Positions 48,998 to 49,712 of a DNA stretch of 64,000 nt are shown piece by piece. The stretch is from Ostrea edulis (taxonomy: Eukaryota). The translations under genes were made by a program, and so were the position numbers. The stretch covers positions 79,608,001 to 79,672,000 of the forward strand of contig NC_079170.1 in the NCBI RefSeq assembly GCF_947568905.1, read 5' to 3'. The notes beneath the pieces are model-generated. The model saw only the letters and a list, made by a program, of their open reading frames with translations, ran no database searches and was not told the origin of the DNA. Every line of letters begins with the position of its first letter. The stretch's first letter is position 1.

Positions 48998-49244
48998 TTA
49001 CAAATCTTTGGACACCGCTGTCAGGGCCCTAAGAGCCCTTTCAATCTCATTCCTGTGTTTGCCTTTGTATATTTTCCCCAGCTTAAGGAACGTATCTTTG
49101 AGCTTTCTCAAGCCTCTTTTTTGCGCTTGATCTTCTAGCTCCTGCCAGCTCTGTTGTGACGTAACACCGCCTTTTGTTCTTTGACCAAGGCCTGCAATAA
49201 TAATGGTAATTGTAATACAAATTGTGATTTAATAAATTCGAGTT

Positions 49245-49285
<41 letters not shown>

Positions 49286-49712
49286 TTACAATGATAAGGT
49301 AAAAGTAATTACGTTTACATTTCTAGATTAAGATTATATTTGATGCATCTACCCTAAGATTATATTTCTAGCTTGATATTATTTCTCTAACGTATGAATA
49401 TATCTATATCTTAAACCATTTCCAGAATCTTCCCAAACTTGTTTACAAACTTCTACAACAGTTGAACACAACCCCTTTAAATGAATTACCAATACTTAAA
49501 ACATACATGTAAGCAATCTCAAATTTTCTGTTATAGTAGTAATCGGCAGATCAGAGATTCAGCAGAATATTGTACATTGTATCTAATTAAATGAATATAA
49601 TGATTGTAGTCTTCTTACTATGGAATCCGAGTCCTTTTGCCGCCGAACAATCCAACACACTCAGAAACACGATGAAGACGAGGATAAGAGAGAAGAAGCG
49701 GAGAGACATCAT
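48998..49712 (-). CDS. Small secreted precursor, 95 aa: signal peptide, spacer, KR, 38-aa cationic peptide (candidate antimicrobial peptide or neuropeptide); complement(join(48998..49191,49619..49712))
   Basis: Exon 1 (MMSLRFFSLILVFIVFLSVLDCSAAKGLGFH, A|GTAAGA, phase 1) splices to TTATTGCAG|GC in phase, giving SLGQRTKGGVTSQQSWQELEDQAQKR-GLRKLKDTFLKLGKIYKGKHRNEIERALRALTAVSKDL-TAA. A possible ATTAAA polyA signal lies at 48738-48743 (- strand). Confidence 0.8.
49250..49283. repeat. (CT)n microsatellite inside the peptide-gene intron
   Basis: Seen directly. Confidence 0.95.

What the first reader, a model, noticed from the sequence alone, without database searches (positions are those of the whole stretch)
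48998..49712. Hidden two-exon gene for a secreted cationic amphipathic peptide (candidate new antimicrobial peptide or neuropeptide)
Seen: the gene is absent from the ORF track because the intron splits it. A 94-nt exon encodes a signal peptide (MMSLRFFSLILVFIVFLSVLDCSAA) and ends A|GTAAGA. It joins in phase to a TGCAG acceptor 427 nt away, giving 95 aa. After a Gln/Glu-rich spacer and a dibasic KR comes GLRKLKDTFLKLGKIYKGKHRNEIERALRALTAVSKDL: 38 aa, 11 K/R vs 4 D/E (net about +7), no Cys, with hydrophobic residues at i/i+3/i+4 spacing in two helical segments. Established: signal, acidic spacer, KR, cationic helix is the precursor layout of linear alpha-helical AMPs such as frog-skin dermaseptin-type peptides. 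It differs from bivalve defensins, big defensins, Cg-Prp, molluscidin and myticalins (mature peptide directly after the signal). Inference: a possible new linear AMP family; an internal YKG-K could alternatively yield an amidated 17-mer, as in neuropeptides. I do not recognise the sequence, but no search was run.
Basis: partly seen in the sequence, partly recalled or inferred. Interest (0 to 1): 0.9.

Follow-up and report, generated by a model that had tools for sequence, protein, structure and literature searches.

The report
Unannotated oyster gene for secreted cationic peptide
A small two-exon gene in the flat oyster (Ostrea edulis) genome, absent from the protein annotation searched, is real and conserved in other oysters; it encodes a secreted, strongly basic helical mini-protein of a previously uncharacterised oyster-only family, and its proposed antimicrobial role is plausible but untested.

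Summary
The window is Ostrea edulis. On the minus strand, exon 1 (49712-49619) and exon 2 (49191-48998) join in phase 1 to give 95 aa.

- **Homologues:** an exhaustive search of 1.84 billion proteins found only two relatives. One is a 47-aa fragment on an oyster-derived metagenome contig (68% identity over exon 2; E 4e-12). The other is an "uncharacterized protein" of Saccostrea echinata (LOC133187738, 93/94 aa).
- **Orthology:** the spliced O. edulis model aligns to the Saccostrea protein without gaps from signal peptide to C-terminus (38% identity). The Saccostrea gene has the same phase-1 intron at the same codon. It also shares a TATA-like box, a poly(A) signal and the downstream neighbour (a collagen-Ig gene).
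- **Selection:** exon 2 has no indels, while its flanks have many. dN/dS is 0.23.
- **Annotation:** no O. edulis protein with this sequence is in the searched collection, although neighbouring O. edulis genes are.
- **Interpretation, partly supported:** the signal peptide, net charge (+9 mature, pI 10.4) and amphipathic helices are real and conserved. The KR "processing site" is RR in the close relative but EK in Saccostrea.
- **Known families:** no Pfam, PDB or fold match, and no paper mentions it.

Antimicrobial or neuropeptide function remains inference. The scan had not found this on other DNA.

The parts
49763..49770 (-). TATA-like box (TATATATA), 58 nt upstream of the ATG
   Evidence: Read. 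A TATATAAA box sits 62 nt upstream of the ATG in the Saccostrea echinata orthologue. It is one of the few conserved blocks in the upstream alignment, together with a TGTCA(G/A)T motif just downstream. The transcription start itself was not determined.
49619..49712 (-). Exon 1 coding part: 94 nt, 31 codons plus 1 nt, followed by a GTAAGA donor
   Evidence: The Saccostrea exon 1 is 91 nt, also ends after the first base of a codon, and is followed by GTGAGT.
49638..49712 (-). Signal peptide, residues 1-25, with predicted cleavage after S-A-A and before KGL
   Evidence: There is a basic residue at position 5, a 15-residue hydrophobic core, and small residues at -3 and -1 (read). Saccostrea has the same layout: hydrophobic core, D-x-S, a small residue at -1, then KGL. 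No SignalP-type tool was available, so the cleavage site is inferred.
49192..49618 (-). Phase-1 intron of 427 nt (GT...AG), 29% GC, containing a (GA)n microsatellite
   Evidence: The acceptor TTGCAG|GCCT is conserved in L001. The Saccostrea intron is at the homologous position and phase and is 345/348 nt long.
48998..49191 (-). Exon 2 coding part (residues 32-95) plus the TAA stop
   Evidence: It is 79% nt and 68% aa identical to L001 with no indel, and dN/dS is 0.23. It is 41% identical to Saccostrea exon 2 by tblastn, E 6e-10.
49115..49120 (-). Codons for K56-R57, the proposed dibasic processing site
   Evidence: KR here, RR in L001, EK in Saccostrea. The site is not conserved across genera.
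49001..49114 (-). C-terminal 38 residues (G58-L95): a cationic amphipathic helix, a Y-K-G-K-H loop, and a second amphipathic helix
   Evidence: Net charge is +7. The hydrophobic moment is 0.61 for residues 58-73 and 0.59 for 78-94. Residues 58-73 carry +4 in all three species and are the best conserved helix between genera at 56%. AlphaFold models place helices here at pLDDT about 60-75.
49055..49063 (-). Invariant G75-K76-H77 loop between the two C-terminal helices
   Evidence: Invariant in all sequences. It is modelled as a loop in both AlphaFold models.
48738..48743 (-). Poly(A) signal ATTAAA, about 255 nt after the stop
   Evidence: TTGAATTAAA is conserved in L001 and is TTGAATAAAA in Saccostrea at the aligned position. 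No RNA data were available to confirm the cleavage site.
48885..48891 (-). CTACCTC heptamer inside the only 3' UTR block invariant in all three oysters; it is complementary to the let-7 seed
   Evidence: One search shows CTGTGATA and CTACCTC as invariant. Only 3 such heptamers occur in the 64-kb window on both strands. The let-7 seed identity is from my own knowledge and was not tested.

Best explanation
SHOWN: this is a real, intact, single-copy protein-coding gene of Ostrea edulis, with two coding exons and a phase-1 intron. It is conserved in sequence, gene structure and neighbourhood in Saccostrea echinata and in an Ostrea-like oyster. It is under purifying selection. It is missing from the O. 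edulis proteins in the collection searched. It founds a family with no detectable relative outside oysters. INFERRED from the sequence: the product enters the secretory pathway through a cleaved 25-residue signal peptide. This yields a Cys-free, very basic protein of about 70 aa (net +9, pI 10.4), made of a flexible Gly/Ser/Gln-rich N-terminal stretch followed by two or three short amphipathic helices punctuated by invariant glycines (G58, G75-K-H). MOST LIKELY MECHANISM (inference, my best single guess): it is an extracellular host-defence-type effector. Its conserved cationic amphipathic helix (residues 58-73, +4 in every species) and the neutral amphipathic C-terminal helix would bind anionic surfaces such as microbial membranes or other polyanions. 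In the Ostrea lineage a proprotein convertase may cut after KR/RR to free a 38-residue helix-hinge-helix peptide, but that cut is not a conserved property of the family. The stated confidence is for the whole statement including the function. That the gene is real and the product secreted I put at 0.95 or higher.
For: - **Gene reality and homologues:** searches give the sequence and the in-phase junction. One search returned only two hits in 1.84 billion proteins (E 4.3e-12 and 3.3e-4). One search identifies one hit as XP_061179122.1, an uncharacterized protein of S. echinata.
- **Full-length match:** the spliced model aligns without gaps over 93 aa, signal peptide included (38% identity, E 2e-21 pairwise).
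- **Intron conservation:** the Saccostrea isoforms differ by one residue exactly at the aligned junction, produced by a TAGCAG tandem acceptor. The intron position and phase are the same.
- **Synteny:** a collagen-Ig gene lies immediately downstream on the same strand in both species.
- **Selection:** the acceptor is conserved, exon 2 has no indel, and dN/dS is 0.23 with p = 9e-5.
- **Signals:** the TATA-like box and poly(A) signal are conserved.
- **Protein properties:** charge and hydrophobic moment are conserved across the three species, and residues 58-77 are the most conserved segment between genera.
- **Context:** Cys-free linear cationic AMPs are few in molluscs and are typically missed by homology (PMC5577615).
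Against: - **No direct functional data:** nothing here bears on expression, tissue, induction, processing or activity.
- **Evolutionary pattern:** the gene is single-copy at this locus and under purifying selection. Many AMP families are multigenic and diversifying.
- **Processing site:** the dibasic site is EK in Saccostrea.
- **Spacer:** the segment before it has invariant W, L and A on a hydrophobic seam and is modelled as part of the helical domain. This fits an intact folded mini-protein as well as it fits a processed peptide.
- **Amphipathicity:** that of the 38-mer is only modestly above shuffles of the same residues (p = 0.07).
- **Fold matches:** the Foldseek hits to frog maximin precursors are not significant (E of 3 or more).
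- **Expression:** no transcript-derived copy of the O. edulis protein was found in the collection, so expression in O. edulis is not shown.
Confidence: 0.4

Rival explanations
1. The gene is real and the product secreted, but it acts as an intact folded mini-protein of about 8 kDa (a two- or three-helix bundle, perhaps dimeric). Its role would be non-antimicrobial: an extracellular ligand, adaptor, or mucus or matrix component, possibly linked functionally to the conserved neighbouring membrane collagen-Ig gene. KR would be just part of a basic helix and would not be cut.
For: The KR site is not conserved (EK in Saccostrea). Invariant W47, L50 and A54 lie upstream of it, with hydrophobic residues spaced 3-4 apart running through the site. 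A continuous 30-residue helix spans the site in the O. edulis model. The gene is single-copy and under purifying selection. It forms a conserved head-to-tail pair with the collagen-Ig gene in two genera.
Against: The fold models are of low confidence (pLDDT 60-65, pTM 0.41). A helical bundle this small, without disulfides and with net +9, is unlikely to be stable alone. Between genera the pre-KR segment is the least conserved part (19-27%) and the cationic helix the most conserved (56%). Synteny across oysters is generally high, so the conserved neighbour may mean nothing.
Confidence: 0.35
2. It is a neuropeptide or peptide-hormone precursor. Convertases would cut at KR (and possibly after the invariant G-K) to release one or two helical signalling peptides, one possibly amidated, that act on a receptor.
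For: The layout is signal peptide, spacer and a dibasic site followed by Gly in the Ostrea lineage. The G75-K76 pair is invariant with a basic residue six positions upstream in both genera, which fits the monobasic-site rule (my reading, using general knowledge of convertase rules). The gene is single-copy and under purifying selection. Many peptide hormones are amphipathic helices of 30-40 aa (general knowledge).
Against: There is no C-terminal Gly-basic amidation signal, and the protein ends KDL or KD. KR is EK in Saccostrea. The putative mature peptide is only 41-56% identical per helix (about 50% over the whole 38 residues) between two genera of one family, which is fast for a bioactive neuropeptide (general knowledge). 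The exhaustive search found no relative in Crassostrea or any other mollusc proteome, including their described neuropeptide precursors. No paper holds the peptide strings.
Confidence: 0.12
3. In O. edulis the locus is not a functioning protein-coding gene. It would be a chance ORF pair, a silent relic, or a transcript that works as non-coding RNA, which would explain its absence from the annotated proteins.
For: No O. edulis protein with this sequence is in the collection although neighbouring O. edulis genes are. ORFs of this length are common in the window. No RNA evidence could be consulted.
Against: The ORF, both splice sites, the TATA-like box and the poly(A) signal are all intact. dN/dS is 0.23, with no indel in exon 2 against an Ostrea-like relative. 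The full length is collinear with the Saccostrea protein-coding model, with the same intron and the same neighbour.
Confidence: 0.04

Closest known systems
Saccostrea echinata LOC133187738 (XP_061179122.1 isoform X2, 93 aa; isoform X1, 94 aa), annotated 'uncharacterized protein'
   Same: It is the orthologue. It aligns without gaps over 93 residues at 38% identity. It shares the signal peptide followed by KGL, the two-exon structure with a phase-1 intron at the same codon, the TATA-like box about 60 nt upstream, the poly(A) signal and the conserved 3' UTR block. It also has the same downstream collagen-Ig neighbour.
   Different: It has EK instead of KR before the cationic helix, a lower net charge (+5 against +9), a tandem TAGCAG acceptor that gives two isoforms, and no terminal Leu. 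It has no known function either, so it adds no functional information.
Frog-skin AMP precursors (dermaseptin type; Bombina bombinin/maximin precursors)
   Same: In O. edulis the order is the same: signal peptide, a more acidic spacer, KR, then a Gly-initiated cationic amphipathic helix. The top Foldseek hits in Swiss-Prot models are maximin and bombinin precursors, with about 25% identity over 63 aligned residues.
   Different: Those hits are not significant (E 3-7, probability 0.35 or less) and are paralogues of each other. There is no Pfam match to any AMP propeptide family. KR is not conserved within the oyster family. At most this is a resemblance of layout, not homology.
Myticalins and modiocalins of mussels (PMC5577615)
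   Same: They are bivalve, Cys-free, linear cationic peptides encoded by small genes with a phase-1 intron and a dibasic site, and they were found only by genome and transcriptome mining.
   Different: In myticalins the mature peptide follows the signal peptide directly and an anionic extension follows the KR. They are Pro/Arg/Tyr-rich rather than helical, multigenic and hypervariable. The order is reversed here, the peptide is helical and the gene is single-copy. No sequence similarity was found.
Helix-hinge-helix host-defence peptides (insect cecropins; human LL-37), from my own knowledge
   Same: They are similar in size (about 37-38 aa), net charge (+6 to +7 with several acidic residues), absence of Cys, and a basic amphipathic N-terminal helix joined by a Gly-containing hinge to a less charged C-terminal helix.
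   Different: There is no sequence or profile match: neither the cecropin nor the cathelicidin Pfam family was hit. The precursor architecture differs and there is no C-terminal amidation signal. The resemblance is physico-chemical only.
Molluscan helical neuropeptide precursors (egg-laying hormone / CRH-DH44 type), from my own knowledge
   Same: They have a signal peptide, dibasic processing and an amphipathic helical peptide of about 36-40 aa.
   Different: Those peptides end in an amidation signal and are well conserved between related genera. This one has neither feature, and no homology was detected.

Membership tests
New oyster family (LOC133187738-like small secreted basic protein) | Significant full-length sequence similarity to the Saccostrea protein | tested here: met
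   E 3.3e-4 library-wide for exon 2 alone. Gapless alignment over 93 aa at 38% identity, pairwise E 2e-21. Profile search E 6e-27 to 7e-22 for the three known members.
New oyster family (LOC133187738-like small secreted basic protein) | Two coding exons with a phase-1 intron right after the KGL-x3 motif | tested here: met
   Exon 1 is 94 nt in O. edulis and 91 nt in Saccostrea, and both end after codon base 1. The isoform X1/X2 difference maps to the aligned junction.
New oyster family (LOC133187738-like small secreted basic protein) | Conserved neighbourhood: a collagen-Ig gene directly downstream on the same strand | tested here: met
   One search shows Pfam Collagen and Ig domains in the Saccostrea neighbour. 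One search finds the window's collagen-gene exons in L002 at 55% and 66% identity.
New oyster family (LOC133187738-like small secreted basic protein) | Coding constraint in the predicted frame | tested here: met
   dN/dS is 0.23 and exon 2 has no indel, while the other frames carry stops. Fisher p = 9e-5.
Linear alpha-helical antimicrobial peptides (functional class) | Secreted, cationic, amphipathic helix without Cys | tested here: met
   Net +7 over 38 aa, hydrophobic moment about 0.6 in two segments, about 39% hydrophobic residues. Helices are modelled. These properties are necessary but not specific.
Linear alpha-helical antimicrobial peptides (functional class) | Antimicrobial or membrane-permeabilising activity; expression in immune or barrier tissues, or induction by infection | not testable with these tools
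   No expression data or assays were available, and no paper mentions the sequence or the locus.
Frog-skin-type AMP precursors (dermaseptin / bombinin-maximin) | Homologous conserved signal-plus-acidic propiece | tested here: not met
   No Pfam family was hit at E up to 10 other than chance-level matches. Foldseek gave E of 3 or more.
Frog-skin-type AMP precursors (dermaseptin / bombinin-maximin) | Conserved dibasic KR immediately before the mature peptide | tested here: inconclusive
   KR in O. edulis, RR in L001, EK in Saccostrea.
Myticalins | Order of signal peptide, mature cationic peptide, KR, then anionic C-terminal extension; Pro/Arg/Tyr-rich; multigenic | tested here: not met
   The order is reversed here, the peptide is helical and Pro-free, and there is a single copy in the 64-kb window and in the 20-kb Saccostrea locus. 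The family definition is from PMC5577615.
Cecropins | Match to the cecropin family profile; C-terminal amidation | tested here: not met
   There was no Pfam hit. The C-terminus is KDL-stop with no Gly.
Neuropeptide / peptide-hormone precursors | Bioactive peptide flanked by conserved basic cleavage sites, often with a Gly amidation donor | tested here: inconclusive
   The upstream site is not conserved as dibasic and there is no C-terminal Gly-basic signal. The internal G-K is invariant but could equally be a structural turn.
Neuropeptide / peptide-hormone precursors | High conservation of the mature peptide among related genera; relatives in other molluscs | tested here: not met
   Identity between Ostrea and Saccostrea is 41-56% in the helices. 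No hit was found outside these oysters among 1.84 billion representatives.
ER-resident proteins (KDEL-type retrieval signal) | C-terminal [KRHQSA]-[DENQ]-E-L | tested here: not met
   The C-terminus is S-K-D-L in O. edulis and L001, and S-K-D in Saccostrea. The motif definition is from general knowledge.

The most novel reading that the evidence does not exclude
This is the founding member of a new, oyster-restricted family of linear, Cys-free, alpha-helical host-defence peptides. In the Ostrea lineage its precursor (signal peptide, spacer, KR, Gly-initiated cationic helix-hinge-helix) has converged on the layout of frog-skin AMP precursors. Standard annotation has overlooked it. A conserved let-7 site in the 3' UTR may add developmental control.
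Probability: 0.3. Interest if true: 0.65.

Novelty: new member of a known kind. Interest (0 to 1): 0.45.

Why it matters
Ostrea edulis is a species of conservation and aquaculture concern, hit hard by Bonamia and Marteilia, and its known repertoire of humoral effectors is small. Linear Cys-free cationic peptides are few in molluscs and are missed by homology-based annotation (PMC5577615). Here a gene of that type is validated by comparative genomics, with an orthologue in a second genus. It is therefore a concrete, cheap candidate for synthesis and testing. It also shows that small two-exon secreted-peptide genes are missing from the oyster annotation searched here. If the product proves to be a signalling ligand or a partner of the conserved neighbouring collagen-Ig membrane protein, it would still define a new lineage-restricted extracellular protein family. 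As it stands, the gene and its family are established here and its function is not.

Tried and rejected
- **First word-indexed protein search** with exon 2 returned nothing. It even missed P0001, which the exhaustive search found later, so a blank from that tool is weak evidence.
- **Family and structure searches:** Pfam on exon 1, exon 2 and all family members gave only chance-level hits. A profile search of PDB sequences gave nothing credible (best E 0.01, an enkurin-domain protein). Foldseek against PDB and Swiss-Prot models gave nothing below E = 3.
- **ESM Atlas:** feature scores were 0.73 or lower for the Saccostrea protein and 0.53 or lower for O. edulis exon 2. These are leads only, and all pointed to unrelated small proteins.
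- **Metagenome scans** for more oyster copies, one by protein pattern and one by a conserved 21-mer, both came back empty. Neither recovered the known L001 contig, so that collection simply lacks it.
- **Literature:** searches for peptide strings from all three species and for the Saccostrea locus and accession found no papers.
- **Paralogues:** none in the 64-kb window or the 20-kb Saccostrea locus.
- **Rejected ideas:** a KDEL-type ER retrieval signal (the C-terminus is SKDL or SKD); an alternative 5' exon of the downstream collagen-Ig gene (this gene has its own conserved poly(A) signal and is a separate gene in the Saccostrea annotation); a signal anchor rather than a signal peptide (the hydrophobic core is only 15 residues, with a conserved small-residue cleavage motif).
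- **Not done:** an exact-sequence look-up of the 95-aa spliced product (cluster or contig look-up). The spliced protein has no reference form, and I did not type it.
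Full report
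**1. Observation**

- The ATG is at 49712, with A at -3.
- The 94-nt coding exon ends ...CAT A|GTAAGA.
- The intron is 427 nt and ends in a pyrimidine-rich ...TTATTGCAG.
- The 194-nt second exon ends in TAA at 49000-48998.
- The junction is in phase 1 (codon A|GC = Ser32) and the product is 95 aa.
- The exon 1 frame runs into a stop 10 codons into the intron. The exon 2 frame is closed 13 codons upstream of the acceptor.

ORF length alone means nothing here, because the window has 211 stop-to-stop ORFs of 64 codons or more. Local composition does point to coding sequence: the exons are 46-47% GC, the intron 29% and the upstream flank 31%.

**2. Species and annotation status**

The single-exon TRIM/NHL ORF at 53888-55546 (+) is listed as the window's own protein on an 88.7-Mb record. 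All of its closest relatives are Ostrea edulis RefSeq proteins. The window is therefore O. edulis, and its annotated proteins are in the collection searched.

No O. edulis protein matching the candidate appeared in any of three searches:
- the word-indexed search with exon 2;
- the exhaustive HMMER search of 1.84 billion representatives;
- the profile search that included the window's own exon 2.

I conclude the gene is not annotated as protein-coding in that annotation. It could still be listed as a non-coding RNA, which I cannot see.

**3. Relatives**

The exhaustive search with the 63 residues of exon 2 found exactly two proteins.
- P0001 is a 47-aa "hypothetical protein" from a 1040-bp JGI metagenome contig. 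Identity is 72% over its 46 aligned residues, and E is 4.3e-12.
- P0002 is 93 aa, 41% identical, E 3.3e-4. It is XP_061179122.1, "uncharacterized protein LOC133187738 isoform X2" of Saccostrea echinata.
- The profile search added only isoform X1, of 94 aa.

No Crassostrea protein appeared, although Crassostrea proteomes are in the collection.

**4. The metagenome contig (L001)**

L001 is genomic oyster DNA from a species close to Ostrea.
- It begins in the intron and even shares the GA-repeat remnant.
- It has the same acceptor, TTGCAG|GCCT.
- It reads in frame from the acceptor to a stop at the same codon.
- Over the 194 nt of exon 2 there is no indel, whereas the intron stub and the 3' UTR need gaps of 8 to 48 nt.
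- Exon 2 is 79% identical in DNA and 68% in protein. There are 18 synonymous differences on 40 sites against 21 non-synonymous on 149 sites. That gives dS 0.68, dN 0.16 and dN/dS 0.23, with Fisher p = 9e-5.
- Both other frames contain stops in both species.

**5. The Saccostrea orthologue validates the splice**

The full spliced O. edulis protein aligns to the Saccostrea protein without a single gap over 93 residues (38% identity, 55% positives, pairwise E 2e-21). The alignment includes the exon 1 part: hydrophobic core, D-x-S, a small residue, then K-G-L.

The Saccostrea genomic locus (L002) shows the following.
- Exon 1 is 91 nt and ends after the first base of a codon, followed by GTGAGT.
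- The intron is 345/348 nt.
- The acceptor is a tandem TAGCAG. Its two AGs produce isoforms X1 and X2, which differ by one Ala exactly at the position aligned with the O. edulis junction.

Intron position and phase are thus identical. Three further features are shared:
- a TATA-like box 58 nt (O. edulis) and 62 nt (Saccostrea) upstream of the ATG;
- a poly(A) signal at the aligned position, TTGAATTAAA against TTGAATAAAA;
- the next gene downstream on the same strand, a collagen-plus-Ig-domain membrane protein. In the window this is 38751-45744 (-), and in L002 it is 11986-15497 (+). Its TM exon is 55% identical and its Ig exon 66%.

That is orthology by sequence, gene structure and synteny. 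From my knowledge of NCBI's pipeline, alternative isoforms are normally emitted only with transcript support, which suggests the Saccostrea gene is expressed. This is inference, not something I checked.

**6. The protein**

- Residues 1-25 have the features of a cleaved signal peptide: Arg5, a 15-residue hydrophobic core, and S-A-A before Lys26. The same layout is seen in Saccostrea. No dedicated predictor was available.
- The mature 70-aa product has net charge +9 and pI 10.4. The Saccostrea product has +5 and pI 9.6.
- Residues 26-42 are Gly/Ser/Thr/Gln-rich and modelled as disordered.
- AlphaFold2 on the four-sequence alignment gives moderate-confidence helices. In O. edulis these are residues 43-72 and 78-94, with loop Y-K-G-K-H (pLDDT 65). 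In Saccostrea they are 43-56, 60-73 and 78-91, with an extra break at the invariant Gly58 (pLDDT 60).
- The invariant residues are W47, L50, A54, G58, L59, L62, L67, L69, K71, G75, K76, H77, I81, E82, L85, S92, K93 and D94.
- The 58-73 helix carries +4 in all three species, with hydrophobic moment 0.46-0.61. The C-terminal helix is amphipathic but nearly neutral.
- Between genera the identities by segment are: cationic helix plus GKH loop 56-75%; C-terminal helix 41%; signal peptide 38%; segment 47-57 27%; N-terminal linker 19%.

**7.

The KR that would release it is a different matter. It is KR in O. edulis and RR in L001, but EK in Saccostrea. A monobasic cut with Lys at P6 is conceivable, but it is not a canonical site.

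The segment before it is not a featureless acidic spacer. It carries three invariant hydrophobic residues, and hydrophobic positions continue at 3-4-residue spacing into the cationic helix. The O. edulis model runs one helix straight through KR. Processing is therefore possible in Ostrea but is not a family-defining feature, and an intact 8-kDa helical mini-protein is an equally good reading.

The neuropeptide alternative is weaker for three reasons:
- there is no terminal amidation signal;
- the helices of the putative peptide are only 41-56% identical between genera of one family;
- no relative was found in any other mollusc.

**8. Comparison with known families**

Nothing known matches.
- Pfam gave only chance-level hits.
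- PDB sequences gave nothing credible.
- Foldseek against PDB and Swiss-Prot models gave nothing below E = 3.
- ESM Atlas features gave low-score leads only.
- Full-text search for peptide strings of all three species and for the Saccostrea identifiers gave zero papers.

The top, non-significant, Swiss-Prot fold hits are Bombina maximin/bombinin AMP precursors (about 25% identity over 63 residues, E 3-7).

Myticalins are the best-described linear Cys-free bivalve AMPs. They have the opposite order (signal, mature peptide, KR, anionic tail), are Pro/Arg/Tyr-rich and are multigenic (PMC5577615). That paper also stresses how few such peptides are known in molluscs and how homology searches miss them.

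**9. Mechanism and odds**

That the gene is real and its product secreted I hold at about 0.95. For function I commit to a host-defence-type, polyanion- or membrane-binding cationic helical effector as the single most likely reading (about 0.4). Close behind is an intact secreted helical mini-protein with another extracellular role (about 0.35). A neuropeptide or hormone precursor follows (about 0.12), and a non-functional or non-coding locus in O. edulis is last (about 0.04).

The physico-chemical profile fits known helix-hinge-helix AMPs: 38 aa, net +7, about 39% hydrophobic residues, and two amphipathic helices joined by a Gly-containing hinge. That profile is not specific, however. The moment of the 38-mer is only modestly above shuffles (p = 0.07). 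The single-copy, purifying-selection pattern is also not the classic AMP signature.

**10. Verdict**

The family is already present in databases as one uncharacterised Saccostrea entry. The novelty therefore lies in three things: a gene absent from the O. edulis protein annotation searched; the definition of an oyster-restricted family with conserved structure and synteny; and a concrete functional hypothesis. It is a good candidate for bench testing rather than a surprise to specialists, so I score interest 0.45. The scan's earlier notes hold no other occurrence of it.

Noticed in passing
window 48885-48891 (-), with the aligned sites in L001 and in L002 about 10670-10690: The only 3' UTR block invariant in all three oysters contains CTGTGATA followed by CTACCTC (CTACCTCA in Saccostrea). 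By my recollection this heptamer is the complement of the let-7 microRNA seed. Only 3 such heptamers occur in the whole 64-kb window on both strands. It may be a conserved let-7 target site.
   Followed up: partly
window 38751-45744 (-) and L002 11986-15497 (+): A type-II membrane collagen gene with Ig domains lies directly downstream of the small gene, on the same strand, in both O. edulis and Saccostrea echinata. The gaps are about 3.2 kb and 1.4 kb. It is a conserved head-to-tail gene pair, and whether the two genes are co-regulated is unknown.
   Followed up: partly
window 53888-55546 (+): This is a single-exon B-box/NHL (TRIM-like) gene. It has dozens of O. edulis paralogues at 75-88% identity, mostly on the same 88.7-Mb chromosome record, so it belongs to a large, recent, chromosome-local expansion.
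   Followed up: no
hits P0043-P0050, P0077, P0088 (JGI metagenome contigs): Short metagenome contigs carry fragments of oyster TRIM/NHL genes at 70-80% identity to O. edulis. They are labelled with bacterial-style names such as 'streptogramin lyase' and 'sugar lactone lactonase YvrE'. This is host oyster DNA in a metagenome, mis-annotated as prokaryotic. L001 may be host DNA of the same kind (its JGI sample is 3300045951); whether the TRIM contigs come from that sample was not checked.
   Followed up: no
window 49248-49284 (intron of the small gene): A (GA)n microsatellite of about 18 units lies about 55 nt upstream of the acceptor. L001 starts with a GAGAGA remnant at the aligned place, so the repeat predates the split of the two species.
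   Followed up: no
window 48551-48574 and 50100-50150: There is a 24-nt homopolymer (G on the minus strand) about 165 nt beyond the poly(A) signal, and a long (CA/TG)n microsatellite about 400 nt upstream of the gene. These are ordinary low-complexity DNA flanking the locus.
   Followed up: no
L002 10430-10440: The Saccostrea orthologue has a tandem TAGCAG acceptor that produces the two annotated isoforms, which differ by one Ala. O. edulis has a single AG at this site (TTGCAG), so it should make one isoform only.
   Followed up: yes
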